Shown one piece after another: positions 151-64,000 of a DNA stretch of 64,000 nt. The DNA is taken from positions 248,001 through 312,000 of the IMG/VR virus record IMGVR_UViG_3300044640_001495. The stretch is one strand, 5' to 3'. The position numbers and the translations under genes were made by a program. The notes beneath the pieces were generated by a model. It saw only the letters and a list, made by a program, of their open reading frames with translations, was not told the origin of the DNA and did not search any database. Within the stretch, counting starts at the first letter, position 1. Each line of letters begins with the position of its first letter.

Positions 151-1969
151 AACCATATCAGCAAAAAAATCAAATAAACCCGTGTGGGTCGCAGCCATTG
201 CTCGCGGACATAATGCAGGCATCTGTCTACTAAAAGACGGAGAGATTGTATTTTCTATCGAAGAAGAAAGATTGAGTCGTCAAAAGTATGACGGCGGTCC
301 GCTTGCGTCAATGGTTAAGATTTTAGAATACACAGATAAGCTAGACTTTTTGGTTGTAGCACATACACAGAGTCTTGCAGATTCTTCGGGAAAAATTGAT
401 TATACCGGCGACGATATGTACACTGGCCTAGCTCGAAAGTTAGGACTAATTGATAGAAAAGTAGCTAACCTACACAAACATCCTCAGGTGATTGATCTCA
501 GTTTCATGCATCACAAGCTGCATGCTGCCTGCGCATTTTATCGTTCAGGTTGGGAAGATGCAGTTTCTTTGATTGTTGATGGTGCAGGCACATTCTATCA
601 AATGAGTTACAACGACCAACCACTGTGGGTATGGGAAGTTGAGTCTATTGTTGATTGTGCATATCCTGCAGATTTCAAAACTCTTTACAAAAATTACGGT
701 GCAAGAGATCCTATTGTTGGAACATTTCAAGCTGAATTTCCTTCTGCAAATTTAGGCGAGGATGGCGAAACACACGAAGCATGGGTTAGTGATCGTGCAG
801 GCATTGTCAAGGCCTACGAGGGAGTAACTGAATATTGTGGATTCTCAGCTATTGAAGCTGGAAAGACTATGGGATTATTTCCATACGGAAAAGCCAACAA
901 TAAAATTCCTCCGTTGTTTGATACAACATCTAAAATTCCGTTAACAAATAGAAACTTATTGGTGCCAAAATATCCAATGAGTAGCATGGTTAATTCACAA
1001 CTATTTGATTATATTGACGAATTTCCTGAAGATCCTAAAGGTGATGTTACCTACATGGACAATCGTAGAGATATGGCCTATGCTGTTCAGACACAGACGC
1101 AAGAACAGGTGGTAAGACTAATCAAATTAGCCGCAGAAAAAAGTGGAAAGAATCGTGTTGTTATTTCCGGAGGCTATGGATTAAACTGTGTTGCTAACTA
1201 TCATTATCTAGAAGAATTAAAAGATAGCGGCATTGAAATTTATGTTGAACCTATCAGCAATGATGCAGGTACAGCAATGGGCGCAGGTCTGCTGTTCTAT
1301 CATGGCATGTATGACGATACTACCATACGTAAATACGATACTTTGTATTATGGCCCTGTACACACTTATACCAGTGAAGAAATTGCTGCAAAGGCAGAAG
1401 CTGCTAATGCAGAAGTTACAGATGCTACAGCTAAAGACATTGTCAAGCTGTTACGTGAAAAAAACATTGTGACTATCTTCCAAGGACGTTCAGAAAACGG
1501 ACCACGTGCCCTAGGCAATCGTTCAGTGCTGTTTGATCCAACATTTGAAGACGGCAAAGACTATGTGAATGCAGTCAAGCATCGTGAATACTTCCGCCCA
1601 TTTGCGGGAAGTATTCTAGAAGAAGATGTACACGAGTGGTTTGATTTACGTGGAATGAAAAACAGTCCATTCATGATGTACGCTGTAAACTGCCAGCCAG
1701 GAGTTGAAGAAAAGATTCCAAGCATTATTCACGAAGATCATACCTGCCGTATTCAAACAGTTAATCCTGAGCAGAACAAGCACTACTATGATTTGATCAA
1801 AGCATTCAAAGATGAAACAGGCGTTCCTATCCTGTTTAATACCAGCTTTAATCTAGGTGGCGAACCCCTAGTAGAAACACTAGATGATGCTATTTGGACA
1901 TTACAAAAGTCAGAAATTGAATACCTGTACTTGCCCGAGTACAGTAAACTAATTAAAATTGCCAACTAA
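140..1969 (+). CDS. O-carbamoyltransferase, NodU/CmcH/TobZ family, full length (Kae1-like plus YrdC-like domains)
   Basis: Motifs EEERLSRQK, HHKLHAACAF, DGAG, SGGYGLNCVAN, NDAGTAMGA, GRSENGPRALGNRS, KHREYFRPFA, FNTSFNLGGEPLVET. Confidence 0.93.
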   Translation: MTVKTISAKKSNKPVWVAAIARGHNAGICLLKDGEIVFSIEEERLSRQKYDGGPLASMVKILEYTDKLDFLVVAHTQSLADSSGKIDYTGDDMYTGLARKLGLIDRKVANLHKHPQVIDLSFMHHKLHAACAFYRSGWEDAVSLIVDGAGTFYQMSYNDQPLWVWEVESIVDCAYPADFKTLYKNYGARDPIVGTFQAEFPSANLGEDGETHEAWVSDRAGIVKAYEGVTEYCGFSAIEAGKTMGLFPYGKANNKIPPLFDTTSKIPLTNRNLLVPKYPMSSMVNSQLFDYIDEFPEDPKGDVTYMDNRRDMAYAVQTQTQEQVVRLIKLAAEKSGKNRVVISGGYGLNCVANYHYLEELKDSGIEIYVEPISNDAGTAMGAGLLFYHGMYDDTTIRKYDTLYYGPVHTYTSEEIAAKAEAANAEVTDATAKDIVKLLREKNIVTIFQGRSENGPRALGNRSVLFDPTFEDGKDYVNAVKHREYFRPFAGSILEEDVHEWFDLRGMKNSPFMMYAVNCQPGVEEKIPSIIHEDHTCRIQTVNPEQNKHYYDLIKAFKDETGVPILFNTSFNLGGEPLVETLDDAIWTLQKSEIEYLYLPEYSKLIKIAN

Positions 1970-24683: not shown

Positions 24684-26651
24684 ATGGACGCAACAAACAA
24701 TATAGCCACCGATTTATTCTATAAAATTAGAAGCCGCTTCAAAGGCCTAAAACTAGGCGATGGAACCGGTTCAATTACCATCAATCCCGAAGATGCCCGA
24801 TTCTTTGACTTTGATTATATGGAAGGCGAAACTGCAATCGGGCATGTTAGTATTAGCCTAGCAGAACAAAATTCATTAAAAGTATATTTCTCAACAGGAA
24901 TTACAGAATCAATGGATGGCGGACAAAAAGATAATTGGTATGGATTTCTAAAAGAATTACGTACATTTGCAAAACGTAGACTAATGGCGTTCGATACTAG
25001 AGACATTGCCAAAGACAATCTAGATCAAAGAGATTATGAATTTCTAAGTCAGCACAATCAGCCTAAAGATCAAGCAAACACAGTAGTTAAACCTGTTGGA
25101 GAAAGCATTATGAGTGAAAGCGCACTATACGGATCAAAGACCGTTAGTTATCAAAAGTTAATGGACACACGTCTTATCATCAAACACAATCAAGCAGTAA
25201 TGGACGATGCAGCACCTGGTGCTAGAAGCCGTAACATTTCTGGACTGTTTGTTGAAAATCAAGACGGAGAACGTTTTAAATATCCATTTATTCATCTAGC
25301 AGGTGCCCGTGCAATGCAACGTCACGTGGCCAACGGTGGCGTGCCATATGACGACATTGGTAAAAGCATTGTTAACATGAGTGAAGAAATTGCACAGCTA
25401 AAGAGTTTTGGCAATTATGTTGTGCGCAACGATCTAATGAATTCAGATACAAATAATGTTGTAGAAAGATCAGCAGAACAACTAAACAGATTGCGCGAGC
25501 AAATTAAAGCTATGAGCAAGCAAAGCCACTACGAACAATATCGTGAATCATTCCAGGCACAAACACAAGAAGAAGTTCCACAAGAATTTGTAGAAGAATT
25601 TACAGAAAAATTCACAGTTAGAAACTTCAAAGAAGATATTAAAAATGTGTTCCCGGTCTTGTATAGACTGATGAAAGAAAGCGACATAGGCTATGACGAC
25701 ATAGTCGCAATGACAACCACAGAACAAGAAACCGTAGAGGATGTTGAGCTCGATGAACACAACGAGTTCGATCGCTTTGAATCTTGGGTTATGGGGTTAG
25801 GCGAAGACTCAGCTATTGCTAGTCAAGATCCACAAGAACAACAGACAGCAAAACAAGAATTACAAGAGTTGGTTAGTCAGGCATTCCCAACAGGCGTTGA
25901 TGGTTCAAATGCTATCGAAAGTCTAAAAGGCATCATTGAAGATCCACAATTATTTAAAGCTATCAAAGAACAAGCACAACAAGATCCAGACTCTGATGTT
26001 CGTGGTATGGTAAAAGATTGGCTAGAATCTAATGCTCCAGAAGCAATTGAAGGGTTAGATTTTGGAGACTTTGAGGAACAGCCTGCAATGGATGCTGAAG
26101 AACAACCACAAGAAGCCAGTGATGGTCCTAACAAAAGCGATGTACCTGCATATCTACGCAAACAAAAAGGTGGAGATGATTGGAAGGTCAGCACTAAAGA
26201 CGTAGAAGATGAAAAAACTAAATCTCCAACAAGTTCAGCAGGCTTAGCACGTAGAAAACAAGAACTAGGAATGGGAGAAGCTGATAGCGAGCCTAGCAAA
26301 AAAGATGACGACAATTCTCCTCCTTGGGATACCGACGACGAAGAAAAGTCACAATTTAAAAAGCCCAATAATCCAAATCGTACAGGCCAAGACAGTGCTA
26401 GAGCATTAGCACAACGAGGCATGCAGTCTAAAATGAATGTACAAGAGTTAGCAGAATTCATCAGTAGTTTTTATGATAGAAATTCAGGTACATTCCCTAA
26501 AGGTCCAGAAGGCGTTGTTATCATGGTAGGCAAAAAGTTTGGTGAACAGGCAGAAATGGTTGCTCGCAAAATGGTAGAAAGAATGGCTCCACAACAACAA
26601 GATCCACAAATTGCAGAATTAGCACGTATTAGAGAATTAGCAGGCTATTAA
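24684..26651 (+). CDS. large acidic hypothetical head-morphogenesis protein (start probably ATG 24684)
   Basis: Late promoter GATAAATA 5 nt upstream; acidic; ends ELARIRELAGY; no portal motifs recognised. Confidence 0.6.
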   Translation: MDATNNIATDLFYKIRSRFKGLKLGDGTGSITINPEDARFFDFDYMEGETAIGHVSISLAEQNSLKVYFSTGITESMDGGQKDNWYGFLKELRTFAKRRLMAFDTRDIAKDNLDQRDYEFLSQHNQPKDQANTVVKPVGESIMSESALYGSKTVSYQKLMDTRLIIKHNQAVMDDAAPGARSRNISGLFVENQDGERFKYPFIHLAGARAMQRHVANGGVPYDDIGKSIVNMSEEIAQLKSFGNYVVRNDLMNSDTNNVVERSAEQLNRLREQIKAMSKQSHYEQYRESFQAQTQEEVPQEFVEEFTEKFTVRNFKEDIKNVFPVLYRLMKESDIGYDDIVAMTTTEQETVEDVELDEHNEFDRFESWVMGLGEDSAIASQDPQEQQTAKQELQELVSQAFPTGVDGSNAIESLKGIIEDPQLFKAIKEQAQQDPDSDVRGMVKDWLESNAPEAIEGLDFGDFEEQPAMDAEEQPQEASDGPNKSDVPAYLRKQKGGDDWKVSTKDVEDEKTKSPTSSAGLARRKQELGMGEADSEPSKKDDDNSPPWDTDDEEKSQFKKPNNPNRTGQDSARALAQRGMQSKMNVQELAEFISSFYDRNSGTFPKGPEGVVIMVGKKFGEQAEMVARKMVERMAPQQQDPQIAELARIRELAGY

Positions 26652-27336: not shown

Positions 27337-28320
27337 ATGGCATCACTCGCAGAAATCCGTGCTAAACTTCAAGAAGCACAATCAAAGTCCACAGGACAAT
27401 CCACAGGCGGTGGAGACAACGCAATTTACCCACATTGGAACATGCAAGAAGGCAAGGAAGCGGTCATCCGTTTGCTACCCGATGGCAACTCTGCCAATAC
27501 ATTTTTCTGGGTAGAACGTGCAATGATCAAATTGCCGTTCGCAGGTATCAAAGGTGAAACAGATAGTCGTCCAGTTCAAGTGCAAGTTCCTTGCGTTGAA
27601 ATGTACAACGATGGTACAGTTTGCCCAATCCTTTCAGAAGTGCGTGGTTGGTTCAAAGATAAATCATTGGAAGAGATGGGTCGTAAGTATTGGAAAAAGC
27701 GTTCATACATTTTCCAAGGATTTGTGGTTGAAGATCCTATTAAGGAAGATAAGCAACCTGAGAATCCAATTCGTAGATTTATCATCGGTCCTCAAATCTA
27801 TCAAATCATCCGTTCAGCATTGATGGATCCAGAGTTGGAAGAACTGCCAACTGACTACCTCAAGGGCGTAGACTTCCGTATTGCCAAGACATCTAAAGGT
27901 GGCTTTGCTGACTACTCTACATCAAAATGGAGCCGTCGTGAACGTTCTTTAACGGAAGTTGAAGCAGCAGCCATTGAAGCTCACGGCTTATTTAATTTAA
28001 GCGACTTCTTGCCCAAGAAGCCTACCGATGTTGAGCTCAAGGTCATGAAAGAAATGTTTGAAGCGTCGGTAGACGGTGAAGCATATGACATGGATCGTTG
28101 GGGTCAATACTTCAAGCCAGCAGGTATGGGACAGGCCACGGGCGATCCTAATAAAGCTGCCGCACCACGTGCCGCAGTGACCGCTCCTGCAGCCGAAGAC
28201 GCTCCTTTTGATGCTGATGAACCAGCTGTCAAAGCCAGTGCTCCGGCAGCTCAACCAGCTAGCGATGGTGCTAGTCGTGCGCAAGACATTCTTGCCATGA
28301 TTCGCAATCGTCAGAAGTAA
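27337..28320 (+). CDS. single-stranded DNA-binding protein, T4 gp32-like
   Basis: MASLAEIRAKL, VIRLLP, CPILSEV, YWKKRSYIFQGFV, acidic/Ala-rich tail; AAGGAGG SD. Confidence 0.92.
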   Translation: MASLAEIRAKLQEAQSKSTGQSTGGGDNAIYPHWNMQEGKEAVIRLLPDGNSANTFFWVERAMIKLPFAGIKGETDSRPVQVQVPCVEMYNDGTVCPILSEVRGWFKDKSLEEMGRKYWKKRSYIFQGFVVEDPIKEDKQPENPIRRFIIGPQIYQIIRSALMDPELEELPTDYLKGVDFRIAKTSKGGFADYSTSKWSRRERSLTEVEAAAIEAHGLFNLSDFLPKKPTDVELKVMKEMFEASVDGEAYDMDRWGQYFKPAGMGQATGDPNKAAAPRAAVTAPAAEDAPFDADEPAVKASAPAAQPASDGASRAQDILAMIRNRQK

Positions 28321-28379: not shown

Positions 28380-28592
28380 ATGGCAAAAATATTAAAAGTA
28401 AATGAGAACTTTTCTCTAAGTTATAATAGTCGCGAAGATCAATCTGGCGACACTGTGGCGGATATTGATATTAGATTCGATAATCCTAAGGATGATTCTG
28501 TTATAATTAAAAGACTAAACACTTGGCTACAAGCAATTGGTCGAGAAGACATTGTTGTAAGCCCAAAGAAATTACCAAAGGGTGAACTATAA
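28380..28592 (+). CDS. hypothetical protein
   Basis: AGGAG SD; stop overlaps the uvsX start. Confidence 0.65.
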   Translation: MAKILKVNENFSLSYNSREDQSGDTVADIDIRFDNPKDDSVIIKRLNTWLQAIGREDIVVSPKKLPKGEL

Positions 28593-29671
28593 TGGCAAAA
28601 GCATTTGATATCAGTAAATTTAGAAAGTCAATTACCAAGTCTATCGACGGACTGAGTATTGGTTTTAATGACCCAACTGACTGGGTTAGCACAAACAACT
28701 ACGCATTAAACTATTTGATCAGCGGATATTTCGATCGTGGTATTCCGTTAGGTAAGGTAACAGTATTTGCTGGTGAATCTGGTGCAGGTAAGAGTTTTAT
28801 CTGTTCAGGTAACCTAGTCAAGAATGCACAAGCACAGGGCATTTATCCTATCTTGATTGATACAGAAAATGCACTTGACGAAAAGTGGCTACACGCTCTC
28901 GGTGTTGACACAAGTCCAGATAAGTTGTTGAAACTTAATATGGCCATGATCGATGATGTGGCAAAGACCATTACAGAATTTATTGCAGAATACAAAACAA
29001 TGGATGAAGCAGATCGACCTAAGATATTGTTCATCATAGATTCATTGGGCATGTTGTTGACTCCTACTGATGTTAATCAATTTCAAGCAGGTGATATGAA
29101 AGGTGACATGGGTCGCAAGCCTAAGGCGCTAACCGCACTTGTTCGTAACTGTGTCAATATGTTCGGTAGCTACAATATTGGCATGGTATGTACTAATCAC
29201 ACCTACGCCAGTCAAGACATGTTTGATCCAGATGACAAGATTTCGGGCGGTCAAGGTTTCATCTACGCCAGCTCTATCGTTGTTGCTATGCGTAAATTAA
29301 AATTAAAACTTGATGCAGATGGTAATAAGACTACAACTGTACAAGGTATTCGTGCAGCCTGTAAGATTATGAAAACTCGTTATGCAAAACCGTTTGAAAG
29401 TGTACAGGTTGAGATTCCTTATGAAACAGGTATGAGTCCATATAGTGGATTGGTCGATCTGTTCGAAGCAAAAGGCATGCTCAAGAAAGAAGGAAACAGT
29501 CTTGTATACACTACCAAAGATGGTGAGATTATCAAGCAGTTCCGCAAGGCCTGGGAACGCAACGAGAAAGACGGACTAGACATTGCAATGGCTGACATTT
29601 CAAAACACGGTGAAATTTCCACTTCTGAGATAACTACTACAGTTGAATCAGACTTGGAGGTCACCGAATGA
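28592..29671 (+). CDS. uvsX: RecA-like recombinase UvsX
   Basis: GESGAGKS, IDTENALD, IIDSLG, GDMGRKPK, SGGQGFIYASS, KTRYAKPF. Confidence 0.93.
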   Translation: MAKAFDISKFRKSITKSIDGLSIGFNDPTDWVSTNNYALNYLISGYFDRGIPLGKVTVFAGESGAGKSFICSGNLVKNAQAQGIYPILIDTENALDEKWLHALGVDTSPDKLLKLNMAMIDDVAKTITEFIAEYKTMDEADRPKILFIIDSLGMLLTPTDVNQFQAGDMKGDMGRKPKALTALVRNCVNMFGSYNIGMVCTNHTYASQDMFDPDDKISGGQGFIYASSIVVAMRKLKLKLDADGNKTTTVQGIRAACKIMKTRYAKPFESVQVEIPYETGMSPYSGLVDLFEAKGMLKKEGNSLVYTTKDGEIIKQFRKAWERNEKDGLDIAMADISKHGEISTSEITTTVESDLEVTE

Positions 29672-29907
29672 AAGACGACTTGATTGCAGATATCTGGACA
29701 TTGGTCATTGAGCATATTCCAGAAAAGCATAGAAAAGATCTAGCTGCCGATTTTGTTAACACACTATTAGATTACGGTATTAAAGAATCAACACTTGAAA
29801 GCCTTCTTGGCGTCGATCCTTACCTAGACACTGCAATAGAATATTCAATCGACGGTGAAGAAATTGTAGACGAGGAAGAAGAATACTACGACGAAGACGA
29901 GGAATAA
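29668..29907 (+). CDS. hypothetical acidic protein
   Basis: Coupled to uvsX and uvsY; acidic tail DEEEEYYDEDEE. Confidence 0.7.
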   Translation: MKDDLIADIWTLVIEHIPEKHRKDLAADFVNTLLDYGIKESTLESLLGVDPYLDTAIEYSIDGEEIVDEEEEYYDEDEE

Positions 29908-30363
29908 ATGAATTGGTATGACAGGGTTAGCAAAGATATAAGCAACATTCCCGATGCTGTGGCCTATTATGAAGCTGAGTTAATCGAAGCAAAACAAGAT
30001 GTCCGCATAGCGGGAAACATCGAGAAGGCAAGTTCGCAGATGCCCGGCATTGTGGAAGAACGCTTTAATCAACTTCAAGAAATTGAAGGTATCCTTGAGT
30101 ACTTAAACATTGAACTTCGTAGACTTCGCAGTCAACACTTTCGCAAATATCTCGAAAACTACCAACGTCAACTAAGCTCTAGAGACTGTGAAAAGTTTGT
30201 AGAAGGTGAAGCTGACGTGGTAGATTTTGAAAAAATTATCAACGATTTTGCCCTACTTAGAAACAAGTGGTTGGGCATTATTAAAGCACTCGATCAGAAA
30301 CAATGGCATCTCAGCAACATTGTTAAATTACGAGTGTCGGGATTAGAAGACGCATCATTATGA
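29908..30363 (+). CDS. uvsY: recombination mediator UvsY-like
   Basis: Helical; HFRKYLENY, KFVEGE, LGIIKALDQKQWHLSNIVK; follows uvsX. Confidence 0.8.
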   Translation: MNWYDRVSKDISNIPDAVAYYEAELIEAKQDVRIAGNIEKASSQMPGIVEERFNQLQEIEGILEYLNIELRRLRSQHFRKYLENYQRQLSSRDCEKFVEGEADVVDFEKIINDFALLRNKWLGIIKALDQKQWHLSNIVKLRVSGLEDASL

Positions 30364-57564: not shown

Positions 57565-58395
57565 TCACCAACTGGGTCGTTTCATTATTTTTGACATAGT
57601 CCACGCAGGCCTAGCATGCATGTCCGTGATGCGATATTGATTGAATTCTCTCGCACAAAAATCTGTATCTCGCCAACTGTCTTTGAGAATAAGTCCTTGA
57701 ACGAATCCGTCAGCAAGATCCACTGTTAGACCTTGTTGGAAAAAATCCACAATTTTTTTGGCCAGTATGCCATGATTGCTCAAGGTGATGTGATTGTATC
57801 TACAGTCCACGCCTCTAAAATATTGATCACTTTGAGTGCCTGGTTCCGCAAACTCTTGCGTTTGGATATCAAACAAGGTGCCCGTGGCCCAGGCTATTTC
57901 TTGGTGGTGTTGAGCTTCACTGACGTCTATGTCAAAGCAGCGCAATATCAAAGGCTTGGGCAAGCCCAGTCTAGTGATGTAACTGGTGAGCCAACCCAAT
58001 CTCATCATCATGTGCAGAGTATCCAATTGTGGTCGTTGAATGTGCTGCATGAATCCTTCTATGGCCTTGTTTTTTTCCTTGGAAACATACTGATCCATAC
58101 CTATGATGTGCATGTTACTGAGATTGGGTTCATCTTGCACAAACCAATATCTGTTGGGATGTGTTAGACATATGACGATTCGATCTTCAGCTGTGATTTG
58201 ATTCACAGAATGAAATCCTGCTCTCAACTGTTGAAAGCACCAATCTTGACTGACTCCATGCTGACTCAGGGGCATTAATTTGAGTCCTAGGTCAGCAGCC
58301 ACCTGTCGCGGCCATGTGATGGTGGCGTCTGTTGATTCCATGGGTTCAACAGAGAAGCTGTCGCCTATCATGATTAGTCTCGGAGTTGTGGTCAT
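57565..58395 (-). CDS. SGNH/GDSL-like protein, paralogue B
   Basis: IMIGDSFS, LSQHGVSQ, DCRYNHITLSNH; aligns colinearly with paralogue A. Confidence 0.65.
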   Translation of the reverse strand: MTTTPRLIMIGDSFSVEPMESTDATITWPRQVAADLGLKLMPLSQHGVSQDWCFQQLRAGFHSVNQITAEDRIVICLTHPNRYWFVQDEPNLSNMHIIGMDQYVSKEKNKAIEGFMQHIQRPQLDTLHMMMRLGWLTSYITRLGLPKPLILRCFDIDVSEAQHHQEIAWATGTLFDIQTQEFAEPGTQSDQYFRGVDCRYNHITLSNHGILAKKIVDFFQQGLTVDLADGFVQGLILKDSWRDTDFCAREFNQYRITDMHARPAWTMSKIMKRPSW

Positions 58396-58435
58396 TTGTT
58401 ATAATTATCTTCTTGATAATATTCACTGAATTTTC

Positions 58436-58464
58436 TTGACAAAGGTTAAATAGCAGTATATAAT
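58436..58464 (+). promoter_or_regulatory. sigma70 promoter TTGACA-N17-TATAAT with nested TAAATA (58447-58452)
   Basis: Perfect boxes upstream of 58488. Confidence 0.75.
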
Positions 58465-58487
58465 TAAACATAACTTAGTGGACCATC

Positions 58488-58922
58488 ATGCTAGAAAGAA
58501 TCACCACACTCACAGACGAATTGATACGACTGCTCAAGGACGATCCTGTTCGACCTGAGATCCCTGCAGACTTTAGAGTGGACAAGAACTCCAGAGTTTA
58601 TGTGTTGAAGAGTGAAACAGGTGAGCCCATGGCTGTGACCTGTGTGAAGTTTCTAGCAGAAATTCCACAAAGTGTAGACGATCTTGCCAATGTGGCTGTG
58701 AATACTTCTACTGCGGTCTTCTATACCATTTGGAGTTATGCAGCCGGTGCGGGTCGCAGTCTTATAGAAGCGGCTCAAGAGGATATCAAGACTCACGAAC
58801 CCCAAGTTAAAACCTTTGTAACACTGAGCCCAAAAACAGAAATGGCTCGCAAGTTTCATCACAAAAACGGGGCCACTACCTATAGAGAAAATCAAGACTC
58901 AATTAACTATCAGTATCACTGA
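58488..58922 (+). CDS. GNAT-fold protein resembling the malonyl-CoA decarboxylase catalytic domain
   Basis: TAVFYTIWSY..GAGRSLI...KTFVTLSP parallels the MCD AVFYSIS...G.GNFLI...FVTLSP pattern. Confidence 0.55.
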   Translation: MLERITTLTDELIRLLKDDPVRPEIPADFRVDKNSRVYVLKSETGEPMAVTCVKFLAEIPQSVDDLANVAVNTSTAVFYTIWSYAAGAGRSLIEAAQEDIKTHEPQVKTFVTLSPKTEMARKFHHKNGATTYRENQDSINYQYH

Positions 58923-59548
58923 TCGTTAAAATTACCACACAATGTATCAACTAGGTGTTTTTCTTTTAGTTTATCAACAGTTGAATAATAGTGGTCGGAT
59001 GTAATTGGCCCTTTGGTTATCAAGGGATTCAGTTCATAATAGCCCATTGACAAAACATATCTAGATTCAGTTCCGTAATTAATACTGTTATGTGGTATTT
59101 GTGTGTTTAACAGATAAAATTGATTGGGTTCGTAGGTGAGTCTAGTATAGGGGAAATAGACGTAGTCTCGAGGCATAAGCGAATCCTTCTTGTGCTCATG
59201 TGCAAACATAACCAAATACTGATCATCTTGTGTCAACATTAAATTAAATGCAGTAGCACGGTAAACATCTCTATGCCAATTATAGATGTATCCGGGTTCT
59301 ATTAACAGTATTCTTGGGTATAAATTAAACTCTTGTATTAGTTCTAGAATTGGTTCGTTCTCGAAATAATTCTGCGGAACTTTATGCTGTTTGAACGTGG
59401 CTGATATCGCAACATCGTGGGTGACCCTGCCTTCTTTGCCTTGATTTTTAGTAACATCAACATGCCCGTAATCAAAAGTTTTACAGTCTTCAAATAAAGG
59501 ATTAGACGGCGAAAGCCCTAGTGATAATTTTGTGAAACACTCATTCAT
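58916..59548 (-). CDS. 2OG-Fe(II) oxygenase / Asp-hydroxylase-like protein (start revised to ATG 59548)
   Basis: EPGYIYNWHRD, AFNLML, PHNSINYG..RYVLS; late promoter AATAAATA 5 nt upstream. Confidence 0.7.
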   Translation of the reverse strand: MNECFTKLSLGLSPSNPLFEDCKTFDYGHVDVTKNQGKEGRVTHDVAISATFKQHKVPQNYFENEPILELIQEFNLYPRILLIEPGYIYNWHRDVYRATAFNLMLTQDDQYLVMFAHEHKKDSLMPRDYVYFPYTRLTYEPNQFYLLNTQIPHNSINYGTESRYVLSMGYYELNPLITKGPITSDHYYSTVDKLKEKHLVDTLCGNFNDQ

Positions 59549-59603
59549 GCTGCTATTTATTTTTTCATTTTGATCAATAGCAGCAAACGTGATTAGAACA
59601 TTA

Positions 59604-59810
59604 TCACTGACTACCGGGTTTAAAGCCCACTGTGTAGACAGCAACCACAGGTTCCCAATTTTCACGATCCTTGGCCGTTTGGCTTTCAGCAAACTGCTGT
59701 GCCACAAGATTGGCTCTGCTGAGATCGGTGATGTGTTCACCAGCGAGAAATTGACGCTGTAGTCTAATACCTGTGCGGCTGTTTCGGGCCATGATCTTGT
59801 ATGCTTGCAT
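59604..59810 (-). CDS. hypothetical protein
   Basis: AGGAG SD and late promoter GATAAATA at 59829-59836. Confidence 0.7.
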   Translation of the reverse strand: MQAYKIMARNSRTGIRLQRQFLAGEHITDLSRANLVAQQFAESQTAKDRENWEPVVAVYTVGFKPGSQ

Positions 59811-59855
59811 TGTGTGCTCCTGGTCGAGTATTTATCAACCTAGACACATCATTAC

Positions 59856-60431
59856 CTATTTGGATTCTTTAACTGTGTAGTTAATGGTTAACACATATCT
59901 GCTTTCGTGTGCAACGGGTGTGGTTGATGAGTGAAAATGCCTGCCGGGAAAGTCCATCCATAGATTGGCCGTGGGTTTTTGTCTGTGCCATTCTGTGTAC
60001 ATTTCCCTTTTAGGCTGTTCCTTGCGCTGATCAAATATGACAGTGTCACCATCACTGGTCGCAGGATAGAATATGCCTGTGCGATGATTCAGTACAGGAT
60101 GATCTATATGCGGTGTGTGTTCCACACTCCAGGGTGTGCGTGTGCATAGTCCCAGGCGCACTCTTAGTACTGAATCCAATTGTTGATCTTGATGATCCAG
60201 AGCAGCCAATAGTATGAGCAGACTGGGATCCCATAATGGACTGATATTTTGACTGTCCTTGTAGATCAAATGACTAAACGATCCCTGATACTGGGGATCC
60301 GCCCCACTGATATCATCAGGGTTAGCAGTAAAGGGCAGATAGAACCAATCTATAGCAGGATCAGTGAGGCGTTGGCAGACATAGCTGAATTGGTTGGGTT
60401 TGAGTAGATCTTGTATGAGTGTGATAGACAT
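59856..60431 (-). CDS. 2OG-Fe(II) oxygenase (start probably ATG 60431)
   Basis: HTPHID, GIFY..SDGDTVIF, HFHSSTTP, RYVLTINY; GATATATA 5 nt upstream. Confidence 0.75.
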   Translation of the reverse strand: MSITLIQDLLKPNQFSYVCQRLTDPAIDWFYLPFTANPDDISGADPQYQGSFSHLIYKDSQNISPLWDPSLLILLAALDHQDQQLDSVLRVRLGLCTRTPWSVEHTPHIDHPVLNHRTGIFYPATSDGDTVIFDQRKEQPKREMYTEWHRQKPTANLWMDFPGRHFHSSTTPVAHESRYVLTINYTVKESK

Positions 60432-60480
60432 GTGAGTATATATCACATGTCAATGATCACCACTCACAGAGTGGCAGCGA

Positions 60481-60654
60481 TTAGGCCTGTCCTGCAGTGG
60501 GATCTAGTGAAGGCAGTGGGGGCTCAACGGGTGGCACATCTTTGGGACTCTGTAGATCCCAATAGGCCATGTGTGCTTTACGTTCAGTAGTTTCGGCTAA
60601 TTTTTTAGCAGTTTCTGTGGCTGCGATTGCTTCGGGTGTCATTGGTCTTGCCAT
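60481..60654 (-). CDS. small hypothetical protein
   Basis: GGAG SD before ATG 60654; late promoter GCTAAATA at 60681-60688. Confidence 0.6.
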   Translation of the reverse strand: MARPMTPEAIAATETAKKLAETTERKAHMAYWDLQSPKDVPPVEPPLPSLDPTAGQA

Positions 60655-60718
60655 GAAGTTCTCCAAATTGGTTAATGATGTATTTAGCTGTGAGATTTCA
60701 GTTGTTGATGGCGCAGCC

Positions 60719-60763
60719 TAGCGCAAAATTTTTTGCTGCGAAGCAGTAGCGCAGATTTTTTGC
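60719..60763. repeat. direct repeat TAGCGCA(A/G)A..TTTTTGC flanking a GCTGCGAAGCAG hairpin
   Basis: Copies at 60719-60736 and 60747-60763; the first is a GCAAAA-TT-TTTTGC quasi-palindrome. Confidence 0.55.
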
Positions 60764-60775
60764 GATCAAGAGTGT

Positions 60776-60910
60776 CTAGTCATCCTCATCATCGTAGTCC
60801 TCATCATCTTCTTCATCATCCTCATCGTAGTCGTCATAATCATCATCCTCATCGTAGTCGTCATAATCATCATCCTCATCATCGTCATAGAAGTGTGGAA
60901 CTGTGCTCAT
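60776..60910 (-). CDS. 44-aa hyperacidic Asp/Glu/Tyr peptide (absent from the ORF track)
   Basis: MSTVPHFYDDDEDDDYDDYDEDDDYDDYDEDDEEDDEDYDDEDD*; GGGAGA SD; GCTATATA late-like motif at 60932-60939; contains a 27-bp tandem duplication. Confidence 0.8.
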   Translation of the reverse strand: MSTVPHFYDDDEDDDYDDYDEDDDYDDYDEDDEEDDEDYDDEDD

Positions 60911-60982
60911 GATAATCTCCCTGTGATCATGTATATAGCTGAAAAAAGGCTAGACACCACGAAAAAATACGTGCGCAGTTTT

Positions 60983-61192
60983 TTAAAGCCCGGTGACTGG
61001 ATCTAGAGTGGGATCTACTAGAGGACAGTGATCACTGAAACGTAGCACAAACTCTGTGTATGCAGGCGTGTGAGTGTCTAGCCAAAAGCGAGTGCGATTG
61101 AGGTGTACTTCATGATCAAGCGCATGACACTGAATAAATTCAAAAACAGTCTTTAGAATGGGACTGGAGTTTAGAACATAGTATTGCTGCAT
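60983..61192 (-). CDS. hypothetical protein (start ATG 61192)
   Basis: GCTATATA 5 nt upstream; protein-like. Confidence 0.6.
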   Translation of the reverse strand: MQQYYVLNSSPILKTVFEFIQCHALDHEVHLNRTRFWLDTHTPAYTEFVLRFSDHCPLVDPTLDPVTGL

Positions 61193-61196
61193 GTGA

Positions 61197-61466
61197 TTAT
61201 ATAGCGCCACGCAATATGCTCATGGTTATTTCTTGATCCGCTATACGAAGGACATTGTAGCACTCCCGCCGGATCTGCTTTTGACTGGGCTTGCTTCTAC
61301 GACCACCCGCAGAGCTATTAAGTGGCTGTAGCTGTAGAAAATTACTGTTGGGATAGAGTTTAATGACTCGGGCCAGAATGAGTCTATTGTGTTCAGTGAC
61401 TAGACAGTGATCTCCGGGTGCGAGAGTGTGGCCCGCAATGTCTCTGTGTTGTAAGGTATAGTTCAT
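61197..61466 (-). CDS. hypothetical protein, SH3/KOW-like small beta domain
   Basis: RDIAGHTLAPGDHCLV..LARVIKL pattern. Confidence 0.55.
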   Translation of the reverse strand: MNYTLQHRDIAGHTLAPGDHCLVTEHNRLILARVIKLYPNSNFLQLQPLNSSAGGRRSKPSQKQIRRECYNVLRIADQEITMSILRGAI

Positions 61467-61638
61467 AGTAGGTATTGTGGTTAGTGTAGAAAAAGGTTAC
61501 AAGATGGGAAAAAATTGGTCGCGTAAAAAATTAGGGTGGAGTACTTATCGTTTCATGGTGGTGATTTGCTACCCCTAGTGTTGTATATACGCAACACTGT
61601 GCATGTATACCCCGACCCCCCACCATGACCCCTCCACC

Positions 61639-61872
61639 TCAGCACCGCCTGGTCATGCCTGGCTTCATCTCATCGGGTCTCAGGTGACTGCCGCACCGTC
61701 TGATGGCAGCGTCATCCCAATTGGGTATCTGTTCGAACAACATGCGGCCCTGTGGCGGGTCATGTGGCGCTGTGCCCGCAGGGCGCAACAGCTTTGCCCT
61801 GTCCTGCACAGCACAGCCCGCAGTACTAGCGGCTGCTAACACGAGCAATAAGGTCAAGAGTATCCTGCTCAT
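61639..61872 (-). CDS. small lipoprotein
   Basis: MSRILLTLLLVLAAASTAG-C type II signal / lipobox. Confidence 0.7.
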   Translation of the reverse strand: MSRILLTLLLVLAAASTAGCAVQDRAKLLRPAGTAPHDPPQGRMLFEQIPNWDDAAIRRCGSHLRPDEMKPGMTRRC

Positions 61873-62059
61873 AGAGATCCAGTCTGTTATCTTGTTCTAG
61901 GCTTTCCTGCACAGCGATAGTGACTAGGCTAGCACAGTCCTGGCCATCACGTTTGGGCAGGCTCTTGATGAATGCTTCAACTGCGGGCATTGAATCCATA
62001 GCCCACATCACATCCATAAGCACCTTCTGCTTGTGAGTAAGTCCTTGTATAGTAATCAT
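61826..62059 (-). CDS. hypothetical early protein
   Basis: ATGA-coupled to the upstream gene; overlaps the lipoprotein start by 47 nt. Confidence 0.6.
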   Translation of the reverse strand: MITIQGLTHKQKVLMDVMWAMDSMPAVEAFIKSLPKRDGQDCASLVTIAVQESLEQDNRLDLYEQDTLDLIARVSSR

Positions 62060-62247
62060 TCTGATGCTGCCTCGTTGGCATATGATGCACCCAGGGCCAT
62101 AAAGCCTATGCCTACCAGTGCAAACAGGCCTAGGTATGCGCCATCGCCTGACAGTAGATCTGGGCTGGTTTCAATGCCGCCCACAACTCCTAACAGTAGC
62201 ACAATACCTGCGTACAGGAAAGATAAAGCCTTTTGTCTAGTAGTCAT
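62056..62247 (-). CDS. small two-helix membrane protein
   Basis: Two hydrophobic segments; AAAGGA SD downstream of an early promoter. Confidence 0.7.
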   Translation of the reverse strand: MTTRQKALSFLYAGIVLLLGVVGGIETSPDLLSGDGAYLGLFALVGIGFMALGASYANEAASE

Positions 62248-62273
62248 TTAGTGTCCTTTGTGTGTATGTAGTA

Positions 62274-62304
62274 ATTATACGGCAGTTTGGCTAATGTGTC
62301 AACC
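62274..62304 (-). promoter_or_regulatory. early sigma70 promoter GGTTGACA-N17-TATAAT
   Basis: Perfect consensus followed by ACATACACACA leader. Confidence 0.88.
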
Positions 62305-62305
62305 A

Positions 62306-62623
62306 TTATTTGGCAATACGCACGATCAAGCCCTGTGGCGTAGCTGCCACATTGTAGCCATTGCTTTCGAATAACTCAACGACCTCTTTAGCCATACGAT
62401 CTCTAGCTCTAGCACCTTCTGCTTTGACTGCTATGAACTTCTTGCGATAGTTGATGTAGAGACTTTTGTAGCTGAACGCTGAATCAAGTAGGTCTCTTAC
62501 TGAGAGAGCCTTGCGGATCTGATCTTGTGAATAGGTGCTCTTGTTGTTTGAGTTTTGACGCTGTGCATCCATTGCGGCTGCAAATGCAAACCCGCCTGCG
62601 TCTTTAGTATCTAGTTCTTTCAT
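62306..62623 (-). CDS. hypothetical early protein (start ATG 62623)
   Basis: AGGAG SD; promoter immediately upstream. Confidence 0.7.
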   Translation of the reverse strand: MKELDTKDAGGFAFAAAMDAQRQNSNNKSTYSQDQIRKALSVRDLLDSAFSYKSLYINYRKKFIAVKAEGARARDRMAKEVVELFESNGYNVAATPQGLIVRIAK

Positions 62624-62652
62624 TACTCGCTCCTGTTTGTGTGTATGTGTCA

Positions 62653-62683
62653 ATTATACTGCCAAAAAGCCTCGGTGTCAACC
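62653..62683 (-). promoter_or_regulatory. early sigma70 promoter GGTTGACA-N17-TATAAT
   Basis: Perfect consensus followed by ACACATACACACA leader. Confidence 0.88.
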
Positions 62684-62743
62684 TACGAAGTGCCCAGGCG
62701 TGTTGCAGGGTCTAGTGGTAGGCTGACACTTTGGCAACCCCTA

Positions 62744-63292
62744 TTAAGCCGCTTGTCTAGCCATATGGATCATTTCAACGCGGCCCATGTATGCGGTATT
62801 TACAACGCAGGGCTGAGTCTTAGAAGCAATCAGTGTACCTGAATTCTCTGTAAGATGAATCTCTGTTACACGGCAGGTGAAAGGATACAGTTTTTTGGTC
62901 TCGCGATAGTCTTCAGCGGCCATCTCTTTCTCACGTGGCAAATATTCATACACACGCAGTTTGACCTTGCGCTCTTGTCCGTTAGGAAAGGCACTGGCAA
63001 ATCCAGGGCCACGAGCACGTCTACGCACTGGATCTTTTGCGCCATCATTCTGTTCAAGTACCAAACGATTAAACGCATCGTGATCTGGAATGCCAGCTTC
63101 AACCATCGCAGCCTTGTCTTCTAGCATCTTGATGTAGTTGAGGAATCGTTTGGCTTTGACTTTGCCACCTGCGCCGTTGACATTATAGGTCTTGCCATCA
63201 ATTAACCATTCAGCCACAAAGGTCTTATATGGACGGGCATCGCGAAACAGTTCTTTAGCTTTGGCCAATGTCATAATAGGATGTGTTTTCAT
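62744..63292 (-). CDS. hypothetical early protein
   Basis: 182-aa ORF downstream of an early promoter. Confidence 0.7.
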   Translation of the reverse strand: MKTHPIMTLAKAKELFRDARPYKTFVAEWLIDGKTYNVNGAGGKVKAKRFLNYIKMLEDKAAMVEAGIPDHDAFNRLVLEQNDGAKDPVRRRARGPGFASAFPNGQERKVKLRVYEYLPREKEMAAEDYRETKKLYPFTCRVTEIHLTENSGTLIASKTQPCVVNTAYMGRVEMIHMARQAA

Positions 63293-63324
63293 CTTGCTCT
63301 TTCTGTGTGTTTGTGTATGTGTTA

Positions 63325-63355
63325 ATTATAACAGGGTTTTGGCACCCTGTCAACC
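63325..63355 (-). promoter_or_regulatory. early sigma70 promoter GGTTGACA-N17-TATAAT with palindromic spacer
   Basis: ACAGGGT-GCCAAA-ACCCTGT inside the promoter; ACACATACACA leader. Confidence 0.88.
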
Positions 63356-63358
63356 AAA

Positions 63359-63742
63359 TTAGATCCAGCTGTCTACCATCATAACGGGCTTCTTCAAGAC
63401 CCGTTTAACAAAGTCCTCGGGCTCGTCGTCAGCACGTACTAACATAAAGCCCATGCTCTCTACCAGGTCTACCTCGCAGATCTGGAGGTCCACACCTGCC
63501 TTCTCAAATGCAATGTTCATCTTGGTCAGGGCATACTTAACGCCTGCTTCAAATGTCTGGTATTCGCCGTCATGGACTTCATCGTAGTCAAACTCTTTAA
63601 GCATGACCTCTGCGTACTCTTCACCGTCTGCTACGATGAAAGGGCGGATCTTCTTCCAGGCCCGTTGATCGGTACAGTCAAAGTGGTCACAGGCTTCGTT
63701 GAGGTCAAACGAGGCAAATGCGTCATAATTTACTTTAGTCAT
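63359..63742 (-). CDS. acidic hypothetical early protein (start ATG 63742)
   Basis: AGGAG SD; the longer ORF-track start overlaps its own promoter. Confidence 0.72.
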   Translation of the reverse strand: MTKVNYDAFASFDLNEACDHFDCTDQRAWKKIRPFIVADGEEYAEVMLKEFDYDEVHDGEYQTFEAGVKYALTKMNIAFEKAGVDLQICEVDLVESMGFMLVRADDEPEDFVKRVLKKPVMMVDSWI

Positions 63743-63776
63743 TGGGTTCGCTCCTAATGTTTGTTTGTATGTGTCT

Positions 63777-63807
63777 ATTATACAACTAATTTGGCTAGTT
63801 GTCAACC
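63777..63807 (-). promoter_or_regulatory. early sigma70 promoter GGTTGACA-N17-TATAAT with palindromic spacer
   Basis: ACAACTA-GCCAAAT-TAGTTGT inside the promoter; ACACATACAAA leader. Confidence 0.88.
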
Positions 63808-63849
63808 TAGTTATGAACAGTTAGAAAAGAATTAAAGGAACCATTGTCA

Positions 63850-64000
63850 ACTCTCTGTCTCTACCCTAACCAACGTCTAGCTAGGGCCGTGACGGTCATT
63901 ACTTCCTACAGTGCCCGCCAGCTTCAGCTTTCGCTTTGCCTTCATATACTTAGATTGAGCGTGAGCGGCCTCACTGTCCTCGCCTTAAGTACCTAACGGT
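63850..64000 (-). ncRNA. candidate structured RNA, 3' portion, truncated by the window edge
   Basis: No long ORF; hairpins GTGAG-GCCG-CTCAC, AGC-GAAA-GCT and CCCTAGCTAG-ACG-TTGGTTAGGG, plus complementary ACAGTG/CACTGT. Confidence 0.35.

What the first reader, a model, noticed from the sequence alone, without database searches (positions are those of the whole stretch)
60776..60940. 44-aa Asp/Glu/Tyr peptide, a candidate minimal nucleic-acid mimic
Seen: after an 8-aa head, 36 residues are exclusively D, E (31) and Y (5), with Tyr spaced 3-10 residues apart. It has a strong SD, a late-like promoter, and a 27-bp tandem duplication that lengthened the tract in frame. It is too short for the ORF track. 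Established: phage anti-restriction and anti-CRISPR proteins (Ocr, Arn, AcrIIA4) mimic DNA with acidic surfaces. Inference: a disordered polyanion with aromatic base mimics that sequesters nucleases, nucleoid proteins or RNA polymerase, or condenses/chelates cations in the capsid.
Basis: partly seen in the sequence, partly recalled or inferred. Interest (0 to 1): 0.62.

Follow-up and report, generated by a model that had tools for sequence, protein, structure and literature searches.

The report
Young hyper-acidic micro-ORF in jumbo phage
A 353-kb lake-water phage carries a recently gained 200-base insert that encodes a 44-residue peptide made almost only of Asp, Glu and Tyr; it looks like a real but very young orphan gene, and its function, and whether it is expressed at all, remain untested.

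Summary
The ORF is real: window 60776-60910, minus strand, 44 codons. It has an 8-residue head and then 36 residues of only D (24), E (7) and Y (5). GGGAG lies 6 nt before the ATG. A perfect 27-bp tandem repeat (2.5 copies) sits in frame. The run is unique in all six frames of the 353-kb genome.

Inside the tract, codon position 2 is always A, position 1 is G or T, and position 3 varies freely. Random decay of a GAT repeat never reproduced this (0 of 200,000 simulations), so the Asp frame looks constrained as protein.

The ORF has no relatives. Every copy found comes from one phage genotype. Four related lineages (about 83-94% DNA identity in the flanks) have the same two neighbouring genes with nothing between them, so the roughly 200-nt cassette is a recent gain at a variable spot. 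Its 5' flank is a degenerate copy of the next gene's regulatory region.

The 'late-like promoter' is only partly supported. No RNA evidence was found.

A disordered polyanionic decoy is the most likely function, but it is untested. Translating such an N-terminal acidic run is known to be risky (intrinsic ribosome destabilization), and the Tyr residues may help translation rather than mimic bases.

The parts
60776..60910 (-). 44-codon ORF (ATG at 60908-60910, TAG stop at 60776-60778) encoding the 8-residue head plus the 36-residue D/E/Y tract.
   Evidence: An identical ORF is present in four IMG/VR contigs of the same genotype.
60779..60886 (-). Acidic tract of 36 codons: GAT 17, GAC 7, GAG 5, GAA 2, TAC 3, TAT 2. 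Codon position 2 is A in 36 of 36, position 1 is G in 31 and T in 5, and position 3 uses all four bases.
   Evidence: 0 of 200,000 random-decay simulations give only D/E/Y; unique in the genome.
60813..60880 (-). Perfect 27-bp (9-codon) tandem repeat, 2.5 copies. One unit is missing in contigs L012 and L013, giving a 35-aa form.
   Evidence: In lake runs X16 and X17 the repeat-junction unitig is as deep as the flanks, so the two-unit form dominates there.
60917..60921 (-). Shine-Dalgarno-like GGGAG, 6 nt before the ATG. This is the same GGAGA-5 nt-ATG layout as the next gene.
60926..60941 (-). 16-nt promoter-like block, CAGCTATATACATGAT. It is a paralogue of the block before the 57-aa gene (60675-60690) and carries one change in the conserved TAAATA core.
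   Evidence: The pattern occurs only twice per genome, and only in this phage, within IMG/VR.
60911..60982 (-). 72-nt 5' flank of the ORF. It is a collinear, shortened, degenerate copy of the regulatory region upstream of the 57-aa gene: A-tract/CTGCGC box, T-tract, promoter block, SD, ATG.
   Evidence: global alignment z = 4.2; 2 of 3000 shuffles reach the score
60765..60980 (-). Approximate extent of the cassette that is present here but absent from related phages. The borders are blurred by a short shared CGCA/CTGCGCA.
60720..60767 (-). 48-nt intergenic element with a small stem-loop flanked by A and T runs. It is invariant in 7 relatives and single-copy in the genome. The variable spot lies directly upstream of it.
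60481..60654 (-). Downstream neighbour, a 57-aa protein of unknown function. The ORF listing gives 61 aa from an upstream TTG. It is preceded by the conserved GCTAAATACA block and GGAG.
60983..61210 (-). Upstream neighbour, a 75-aa protein of unknown function. In relatives its stop codon abuts the 48-nt element.

Best explanation
This is a very young, lineage-specific small gene (or proto-gene) in a variable accessory region of a freshwater jumbo myovirus. A cassette of about 200 nt entered the spot just upstream of a conserved 48-nt intergenic element. The cassette carries a degenerate copy of the neighbouring gene's regulatory region, an ATG, and a GAY/GAR/TAY codon repeat. The repeat has since grown by a 27-bp in-frame duplication.

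If translated, the product is a 44-residue, unstructured polyanion with a net charge of about -31. The most likely mode of action is non-specific electrostatic decoy binding. It would compete with DNA or RNA for the basic surfaces of nucleic-acid-binding proteins of the host (nucleoid proteins, RNA polymerase, nucleases), as the disordered acidic region of SPO1 Gp44 does. The Tyr residues would serve as bulky or sticky contacts, and may help the ribosome get through the acidic run.

Shown: the anatomy, the coding-type constraint, the recent gain and the duplicated regulatory flank. Inferred: translation, stability and every aspect of function.
For: - ORF, SD and repeat are as described.
- The codon-phase pattern restricts change to synonymous, D/E or Y outcomes. 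After removing one repeat unit, 13 of the 16 departures from GAT are at position 3, 3 are G-to-T at position 1, and none are at position 2.
- GGAG in the SD window is about 8-fold enriched at real starts in this genome.
- All neighbouring genes are on the same strand. Four perfect sigma70 promoters lie upstream, and the scan found no minus-strand terminator-like site between them and the ORF, so read-through transcription is plausible.
- The cassette is absent from L011, L021, L022/L023 and L025, and other content occupies the spot in L018, L019, L020 and L024.
- The 5' flank is a paralogue of the next gene's regulatory region.
- No fold is predicted.
- The precedent for a disordered acidic single-strand-DNA mimic is SPO1 Gp44 residues 56-122: 57% D/E, no basic residues, binds RNA polymerase subunits (PMC8208478).
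- D/E/Y tracts recur in at least 61 other viral contigs, including free small ORFs such as a 59-aa one in L069.
Against: - There is no evidence of transcription or translation. The two RNA runs that share words hold only 90-99% alike fragments, and none of the pieces lying on the ORF is better than 95% alike.
- All carriers are one genotype (0-1 mismatch in 6 kb), so there is no independent test of purifying selection. The codon-phase signal could have been inherited from a donor sequence.
- The promoter copy is mutated at a position that is invariant in the orthologous promoters.
- Glu codon use (GAG 5, GAA 2) is atypical for a genome that uses 80% GAA.
- An acidic run starting at residue 9 is the situation in which E. 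coli ribosomes abort most often (bioRxiv 10.1101/2021.02.02.429294). This peptide has 9 D/E in its densest 10-residue window within residues 2-31, while no other crude gene of the phage exceeds 6.
- No partner is known.
Confidence: 0.4

Rival explanations
1. It is a neutral by-product: a codon-like repeat expansion in a variable intergenic spot that happens to be open. It is either untranslated, or translated into a peptide with no role (a proto-gene at best).
For: - A repeat based on GAT is open in several frames by construction: the Met-rich and His-rich ORFs overlap it.
- It is present in one genotype only and absent from all relatives.
- There is no RNA evidence.
- The promoter core is mutated and Glu codon use is atypical.
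- Length changes in a period-3 repeat are always in frame, so the in-frame duplication says little.
Against: - The position-2 invariance and the restriction to D/E/Y outcomes are not expected from neutral decay.
- A proper ATG with GGAG at the spacing used by the neighbouring gene precedes a non-repeat head.
- The two-unit form is held at full depth in lake populations sampled in different years.
Confidence: 0.3
2. It is a cis-acting regulatory mini-ORF. Translating the acidic run destabilizes ribosomes (intrinsic ribosome destabilization, as in MgtL). How far ribosomes get, depending on Mg2+ or ribosome state, sets transcription or translation of the downstream 57-aa gene through the conserved stem-loop element.
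For: - The acidic run starts at residue 9, the most destabilization-prone position (bioRxiv 10.1101/2021.02.02.429294, sections read).
- The stop codon lies about 10 nt before a conserved 48-nt element with a small stem-loop and A/T runs, followed by the next gene's promoter block and SD.
Against: - Relatives run the same downstream gene and element without any such ORF.
- The RNA folds are not better than shuffles (z -1.0 and -1.3).
- 36 acidic codons are far more than the few needed for such a sensor.
- The bulky PHFY just before the run, and Tyr within it, are features reported to counteract abortion rather than promote it.
Confidence: 0.1
3. It is a virion or capsid-associated polyanion. 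It would be packaged or used during head assembly, as a counter-ion partner for basic internal proteins or polyamines, or as a cation buffer.
For: - The promoter-like block resembles the late-type motif.
- D/E/Y tracts of 19-31 residues occur inside head-maturation-protease/major-head fusion proteins (phrog_3270) of other phages.
- T4 heads contain acidic internal peptides (own knowledge).
Against: - The ORF lies in a block of small accessory genes driven by early sigma70-type promoters, more than 30 kb from the structural module.
- It has no targeting or cleavage motif and no link to a scaffold protein.
- A polyanion would be repelled by packaged DNA.
Confidence: 0.07
4. The coding frame is another one: the plus-strand His/Arg-rich 59-aa ORF (60733-60912) or the minus-strand Met-rich 40-aa ORF (60766-60888).
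For: Both are open. His-rich peptides could bind metals.
Against: - In those frames the sequence variation is non-synonymous and gives 5-6 residue types (logic).
- The plus-strand ORF starts at a TTG inside the conserved element without an SD and runs against all neighbouring genes.
- The Met-rich ORF has no SD.
Confidence: 0.03

Closest known systems
SPO1 Gp44, central disordered acidic region (residues 56-122), a single-strand-DNA mimic that binds RNA polymerase (PMC8208478)
   Same: Phage-encoded; intrinsically disordered; no Lys or Arg; very high D/E content; internally repeated; proposed to act by non-specific electrostatic mimicry.
   Different: Gp44 is a 27-kDa three-domain protein whose DNA-binding N-terminal domain and C-terminal part are both needed. 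It is 57% D/E, against 86% in this tract. There is no sequence relationship. Here nothing but the tract and an 8-residue head exists.
Folded DNA-mimic anti-restriction and anti-CRISPR proteins (T7 Ocr, ArdA, T4 Arn, AcrIIA4, AcrF2)
   Same: Small, acidic phage products that occupy the DNA-binding sites of host proteins; usually encoded in accessory regions.
   Different: Those proteins have defined folds that place carboxylates at the spacing of DNA phosphates. This peptide has no predicted fold and no match to any family or solved chain.
Intrinsic ribosome destabilization sequences and the MgtL leader peptide (bioRxiv 10.1101/2021.02.02.429294)
   Same: A run of acidic residues close to the N-terminus of a short ORF lying upstream of another gene.
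   Different: MgtL is a few codons of EPDP upstream of a Mg2+ transporter gene, with defined alternative RNA structures. Here there are 36 acidic or Tyr codons, no significant RNA structure, and bulky residues that should counteract abortion.
Hyperplastic regions and promoter/stem-loop (PeSL) mediated gene shuffling in T4-type phages (PMC2839356, PMC4122927)
   Same: Small orphan ORFs are gained, lost or swapped between close relatives exactly at a conserved composite stem-loop/promoter motif. The phage has T4-like modules (gp32-, UvsX- and UvsY-like genes, an ATAAATA late motif).
   Different: PeSLs are dispersed repeats containing an early promoter. The 48-nt element here is single-copy in the genome and sits next to a late-type motif.
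D/E/Y low-complexity tracts in other viral proteins
   Same: The same residue alphabet and the same DDYDDYDE word. A few are free small ORFs (L069 59 aa, L079 56 aa, L040 51 aa).
   Different: Most are tails or linkers of larger proteins, for example the protease-capsid fusions of phrog_3270. None shares the head or flanks. The likeness is compositional and probably convergent.
Acidic C-terminal tails of single-strand-binding proteins (E. coli SSB, T7 gp2.5, T4 gp32; own knowledge)
   Same: Disordered acidic segments with aromatic residues that bind basic or hydrophobic pockets of partner proteins and compete with single-stranded DNA.
   Different: Those tails are attached to OB-fold proteins and end in an aromatic or hydrophobic residue. 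This peptide is free-standing and ends in DDEDD. The phage's own gp32-like protein has no such tail.

Membership tests
Folded DNA-mimic proteins (Ocr / ArdA / Arn / AcrIIA4 type) | Sequence or profile similarity to a described family | tested here: not met
   No family at E<=10 in Pfam or at E<=0.01 in PHROGs; no PDB chain at E<=10; 0 hits at E<=0.001 in 1.84 billion representatives.
Folded DNA-mimic proteins (Ocr / ArdA / Arn / AcrIIA4 type) | Stable fold that displays carboxylates with the geometry of the DNA backbone | tested here: not met
   AlphaFold2 single-sequence model: mean pLDDT 61, pTM 0.12, no secondary structure. This is a weak test for an orphan, but the composition (86% D/E) makes a fold implausible.
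Folded DNA-mimic proteins (Ocr / ArdA / Arn / AcrIIA4 type) | Binds the DNA-binding site of a defined target protein | not testable with these tools
   The host and any target are unknown, so no complex prediction was attempted.
Disordered acidic nucleic-acid mimic (SPO1 Gp44 56-122 type) | Long stretch with more than 50% D/E, no basic residues, predicted disordered | tested here: met
   31 of 36 residues are D/E, there is no K or R, and one His lies in the head. No structure is predicted.
Disordered acidic nucleic-acid mimic (SPO1 Gp44 56-122 type) | Homology to Gp44, and flanking DNA-binding and C-terminal domains required for activity | tested here: not met
   No homologues. The ORF has only an 8-residue head.
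Intrinsic-ribosome-destabilization leader peptides (MgtL type) | D/E(/P)-rich run within the first ~30 residues of a short ORF | tested here: met
   The run begins at residue 9, with 9 D/E in the densest 10-residue window of residues 2-31. The maximum in 449 crude genes of the phage is 6.
Intrinsic-ribosome-destabilization leader peptides (MgtL type) | Alternative RNA structures that couple ORF translation to expression of the downstream gene | tested here: inconclusive
   A small conserved stem-loop element follows the stop codon, but the folds are no better than shuffles, and relatives keep the element without the ORF.
PeSL-type mobile regulatory cassettes of T4-type phages | Indels or gene swaps between close relatives occur exactly at the conserved promoter/stem-loop motif | tested here: met
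   Four kinds of content lie upstream of the invariant 48-nt element in 8 or more relatives.
PeSL-type mobile regulatory cassettes of T4-type phages | The motif is a dispersed repeat present many times in the genome and includes an early promoter | tested here: not met
   The element is single-copy in the 353-kb genome. The adjacent promoter block is of the late-type TAAATA class.
SSB-type acidic C-terminal tails | Acidic tail attached to an OB-fold protein and ending in an aromatic or hydrophobic residue | tested here: not met
   The ORF is free-standing and ends in DDEDD. The gp32-like protein of the phage lacks such a tail.

The most novel reading that the evidence does not exclude
The ORF is a functional, free-standing minimal polyanion: a 35-44-residue D/E/Y micropeptide with no folded part. 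It would have arisen recently from duplicated regulatory DNA plus codon-repeat expansion, in effect a gene caught at birth in a phage variable spot. It would act as a length-tunable nucleic-acid decoy against host DNA-binding or defence proteins, with the Tyr residues selected because they let ribosomes traverse an otherwise untranslatable N-terminal acidic run.
Probability: 0.12. Interest if true: 0.7.

Novelty: new variant of a known kind. Interest (0 to 1): 0.35.

Why it matters
If the peptide is made and active, it would be the smallest and simplest nucleic-acid-mimic-like phage product known. It would show that bare charge density plus a few aromatic residues is enough for a counter-host function.

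It would also be a dated example of how phage variable regions create new genes, because the presence/absence series in relatives and the duplicated regulatory flank are both visible.

It is a natural test case for the rule that N-terminal acidic runs abort translation. Either the peptide is barely made, or its PHFY head and interspersed Tyr residues are a natural solution to that problem.

If it is not expressed, it is an ordinary low-complexity orphan ORF of the kind common in jumbo-phage accessory regions.

Tried and rejected
- Near-identity DNA search of 58000-64000 against GenBank phages found no match.
- PHROGs, Pfam and PDB sequence searches with the peptide found nothing.
- The word-index protein search gave only the peptide's own one-unit variant, mis-called as 61 aa because a gene caller read TAG as Gln. 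The genome has no tRNA with a CTA anticodon, so that reading is an artefact.
- The exhaustive HMMER search of 1.84 billion representatives gave 0 hits. This is expected for a low-complexity 44-mer, so it shows little beyond the absence of near-identical kin.
- The ESM Atlas feature search gave only unnamed clusters below 0.9. These are leads of no value.
- A back-translated head pattern and the promoter-block pattern found only the same phage in IMG/VR.
- Rfam gave only sub-threshold C/D-box hits caused by the repeated UGAUGA words, rejected as chance.
- RNA folds of both flanks are no better than shuffles.
- A sigma70 promoter for the ORF was not found.
- The metatranscriptome runs X19 and X20 are not informative. 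Their pieces are 90-99% alike and short, and probably come from other organisms or relatives.
- The one-unit (35-aa) form in L012 and L013 was considered as proof of natural length polymorphism. It is kept only as 'possible', because a 27-bp repeat forms a loop in a k=31 graph and can be collapsed by assemblers.
- The inverted and direct GTGTCTAG copies flanking the ORF were considered as ends of a mobile element. This was rejected as unproven: the 8-mer is at chance frequency genome-wide (12 copies against about 11 expected), and the indel borders defined by relatives do not coincide with the copies.
- No complex prediction was run, because no justified partner exists.

Full report
**Setting.** The window is bases 248001-312000 of a 353,123-bp IMG/VR virus record rated 98% complete. 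It is a jumbo myovirus with T4-like modules.
- The 1139-aa tail sheath is about 40% identical to those of PA5oct-type and Atu_ph07-type phages.
- It also has a large terminase, DnaB-like and other helicases, and gp32-like, UvsX-like and UvsY-like genes.
- It carries 32 tRNAs and a tmRNA-like gene.
- Near-identical DNA occurs in at least 18 lake-water metagenome runs from 18 different studies.
- The finding lies in a block of small minus-strand genes. Four perfect TTGACA-17-TATAAT promoters lie upstream at 63805, 63353, 62681 and 62302.
- Its neighbours are orphan proteins and two paralogous proteins of PHROG 274, one at 59856-60446 in the window and a counterpart in L006.

**Observation.**
- The ORF is at 60776-60910 on the minus strand, 44 codons. 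After the head MSTVPHFY come 36 residues that are only Asp (24), Glu (7) and Tyr (5). Tyr falls at residues 16, 19, 25, 28 and 39.
- GGGAG lies 6 nt before the ATG. In this genome GGAG in that window precedes 19% of crude gene starts against 2.3% of all ATGs.
- Tandem Repeats Finder reports a 27-bp unit in 2.5 perfect copies at 60813-60880.
- The run is unique. In a six-frame scan of the whole genome the next longest D/E/Y run has 12 residues.

**Is it coding?** A GAT-type repeat is open in several frames by construction, so openness alone proves nothing; a Met-rich ORF and a His-rich ORF overlap this one. The informative signal is codon phase.
- After removing one duplicated unit, position 2 is A in 27 of 27 codons. 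Position 1 is G in 24 and T in 3. Position 3 uses T 14, C 7, G 4 and A 2.
- Sixteen departures from GAT are all either third-position changes or G-to-T at position 1, and none creates a stop.
- In 200,000 simulations of random decay of a GAT repeat with the same number of changes, none stayed within D/E/Y.
- In the other open frames the same variation is non-synonymous.
- This argues for constraint on an acidic-plus-Tyr product in this frame. It could in principle have been inherited from a donor sequence.
- Against maturity as a gene, Glu codons are GAG 5 to GAA 2 in a genome that uses 80% GAA.

**Relatives.**
- The four IMG/VR contigs that carry the ORF (L002-L005) differ from the window by 0-1 bases in 6 kb. 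They are the same genotype and give no evolutionary test.
- The word-index search found one other protein, P0001. It comes from two short contigs (L012 from Logan, L013 from ENA). These are identical to the window except that one 27-bp unit is missing. The gene caller had read the TAG stop as Gln. The true product there would be 35 aa.
- This may be natural length variation, but a 27-bp repeat forms a loop in a k=31 assembly graph and can be collapsed. In two lake runs the loop unitig (60824-60869) is as deep as the flanks and the shared unitig is twice as deep. The two-unit form therefore dominates there.
- The exhaustive HMMER search, Pfam, PHROGs and PDB sequences gave nothing.

**Presence and absence.** The flanking genes do have relatives, and these are decisive.
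- In L011 (90-94% DNA identity), L022/L023, L021 and L025, the stop codon of the 75-aa gene is followed within a few to about twenty bases by a 48-nt element (window 60720-60767). That element is invariant in all seven aligned sequences. The promoter block, SD and ATG of the 57-aa gene follow it. There is no acidic ORF.
- In L019, L020 and L024 an unrelated opposite-strand gene occupies the spot. In L018 the 75-aa gene is missing. In the more distant L006 the 75-aa homologue runs straight into a PHROG-274-type gene.
- The roughly 200-nt cassette (about 60765-60980) is therefore a gain in the window's lineage, at a spot where content turns over. This resembles the hyperplastic regions of T4-type phages, where indels occur at promoter/stem-loop motifs (PMC2839356, PMC4122927). 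Here, however, the element is single-copy in the genome.

**Origin of the signals.**
- The 72 nt between the 75-aa stop and the ORF's ATG align collinearly with the regulatory region of the 57-aa gene: A-run plus CTGCGC, T-run, a 16-nt block, GGAGA, five bases, ATG. The alignment has z = 4.2, and 2 of 3000 shuffles reach the score.
- The 16-nt block matches the window's own neighbour at 14 of 16 positions and L020's version at 15 of 16.
- In IMG/VR the block-plus-SD pattern occurs only in this phage, twice, at these two adjacent genes.
- The ORF's expression signals are therefore a diverged duplicate of its neighbour's. The degree of divergence (about 60% overall) is greater than the 6-10% separating the window from L011. 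Import by recombination from an unsampled relative is therefore at least as likely as birth on the spot.

**Promoter claim.**
- Motif counting shows the phage's late-type signal is ATAAATA. It is 12.7-fold enriched in upstream regions, and 47 of 69 copies lie within 60 nt of a start, often 11-14 nt before the ATG.
- The 57-aa gene has GCTAAATACA, invariant in relatives. The ORF's copy reads GCTATATACA, changed at an invariant core position. CTATATA is only weakly associated with starts (7 of 52).
- No sigma70-type promoter is present.
- Transcription could still come by read-through from the early promoters upstream, because no terminator-like site was found between them on the minus strand.
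- Timing is therefore open, and 'late-like promoter' is only partly supported.
- The two metatranscriptome runs that share words with the region hold only short pieces that are 90-99% alike, none of those on the ORF above 95%. There is no expression evidence either way.

**What it would be and do.**
- The product has net charge about -31 and no Lys or Arg. It is predicted without secondary structure (mean pLDDT 61, pTM 0.12).
- The closest functional precedent I could document is the disordered acidic middle region of SPO1 Gp44: 57% D/E, no basic residues, behaves like single-stranded DNA and binds RNA polymerase subunits (PMC8208478). There it works as part of a three-domain protein.
- Folded mimics such as Ocr are a different solution.
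- I therefore favour a non-specific electrostatic decoy for basic nucleic-acid-binding surfaces, at modest confidence (0.4 for the whole statement; about 0.65 that it is a translated gene at all).

- In E. coli, runs of acidic residues destabilize the translating ribosome. The risk is greatest in the first ~30 residues, before the exit tunnel is filled. Bulky residues just before the run counteract it (bioRxiv 10.1101/2021.02.02.429294).
- This ORF starts its run at residue 9 and has 9 D/E in its densest 10-residue window within residues 2-31. No other crude gene of the phage exceeds 6 in that region.
- Either little full-length peptide is made, or the PHFY head and the interspersed Tyr are what make it translatable. 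That gives the aromatic residues a role other than 'base mimicry'.
- It also motivates a rival: a MgtL-like regulatory mini-ORF. I rate this low because relatives run the same downstream gene without it, and no RNA switch is evident.

**Context from other viruses.**
- A back-translated DDYDDYDE pattern hits 61 other IMG/VR contigs, where about 0.1 would be expected by chance (my estimate).
- Most hits are tails or linkers of larger proteins. These include tracts of 19-31 residues inside head-maturation-protease/major-head fusion proteins of phrog_3270.
- A few are free small ORFs. One is a 59-aa ORF in L069, directly upstream of a thymidylate-synthase-like gene and on the same strand as a dUTPase-like gene (both named from visible motifs, not searched).
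- The residue alphabet is therefore a recurrent, probably convergent, viral low-complexity type. A peptide that is almost nothing but the tract is the unusual part.

**Verdict.** The ORF is best read as a very young, lineage-specific small gene or proto-gene encoding a disordered polyanion. The mimicry idea is plausible but untested. The promoter claim is weak, and translation itself is questionable on known grounds.

Noticed in passing
window 63805-63777, 63353-63325, 62681-62653, 62302-62274 (minus strand) and 58436-58464 (plus strand): Five perfect 12/12 sigma70 consensus promoters (TTGACA, 17 nt, TATAAT). GGTTGAC, GTATAAT and ACACACA words are enriched in upstream regions genome-wide, and the copies at 62302, 62681 and 63353 are followed by a CACACA-type stretch. 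This looks like a family of strong early promoters in the small-gene block.
   Followed up: partly
whole genome G000; for example window 59554-59560 and 59829-59835 (minus strand): The late-type motif ATAAATA has 47 of its 69 copies within 60 nt upstream of a gene start. It often lies only 11-14 nt before the ATG with no Shine-Dalgarno sequence, which suggests very short leaders on late genes.
   Followed up: partly
window 60720-60767: A 48-nt intergenic element is invariant in seven relatives whose flanking genes differ by 6-20%. It is single-copy in the genome and marks a spot where gene content differs between relatives: nothing, the acidic ORF, an opposite-strand gene, or loss of the 75-aa gene. 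On the plus strand it reads as a terminator-like hairpin followed by a T run.
   Followed up: partly
window 29668-29907 (+): A 79-aa orphan protein ends in a 12-residue D/E/Y tail (DEEEEYYDEDEE). It lies between the UvsX-like recombinase (28592-29671) and the UvsY-like mediator (29908-30363), with a gp32-like SSB at 27337-28320. It may be an acidic-tail partner in the recombination module.
   Followed up: partly
genome G000 24882-25318 and 58125-66330 (outside the window): ARAGORN finds a tmRNA-like gene (permuted type) and a cluster of about 29 tRNAs including Asp-GTC, Glu-TTC and Tyr-GTA. There is no tRNA with a CTA anticodon, so reading TAG as Gln on short contigs (P0001) is a gene-caller artefact.
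   Followed up: no
L027:4068-5831, L074:4758-6626, L030:658-2754 (other IMG/VR viruses): D/E/Y tracts of 19-31 residues sit inside head-maturation-protease/major-head fusion proteins (phrog_3270), just before a conserved MKHN-FD motif. This is a recurrent acidic-aromatic linker in prohead proteins.
   Followed up: partly
L069:3433-3612 (minus strand): An unrelated AT-rich phage has a free 59-aa ORF with a 26-residue D/E/Y run. It overlaps the start of a gene that, from its visible motifs, looks like a ThyX-type thymidylate synthase (not searched against any family). It is the closest compositional analogue of the finding.
   Followed up: partly
window 60773-60780 (+), 60950-60957 (-), 61074-61081 (+): The 8-mer GTGTCTAG occurs three times within 310 nt around the ORF. 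One pair forms a 10-nt perfect inverted repeat and another a 12/13 direct repeat. Genome-wide the 8-mer is at chance frequency (12 copies). The meaning is unknown.
   Followed up: partly
window 59856-60446 (-) and L006:3212-3772: Proteins of PHROG 274 (labelled 'DNA endonuclease V' in PHROGs) flank the small-gene block. In the distant relative L006 such a gene directly follows the 75-aa gene.
   Followed up: no
window 140-1969 (+): A Nol-type carbamoyltransferase (phrog_1601, E 3e-165), an auxiliary metabolic gene, lies at the start of the window.
   Followed up: no
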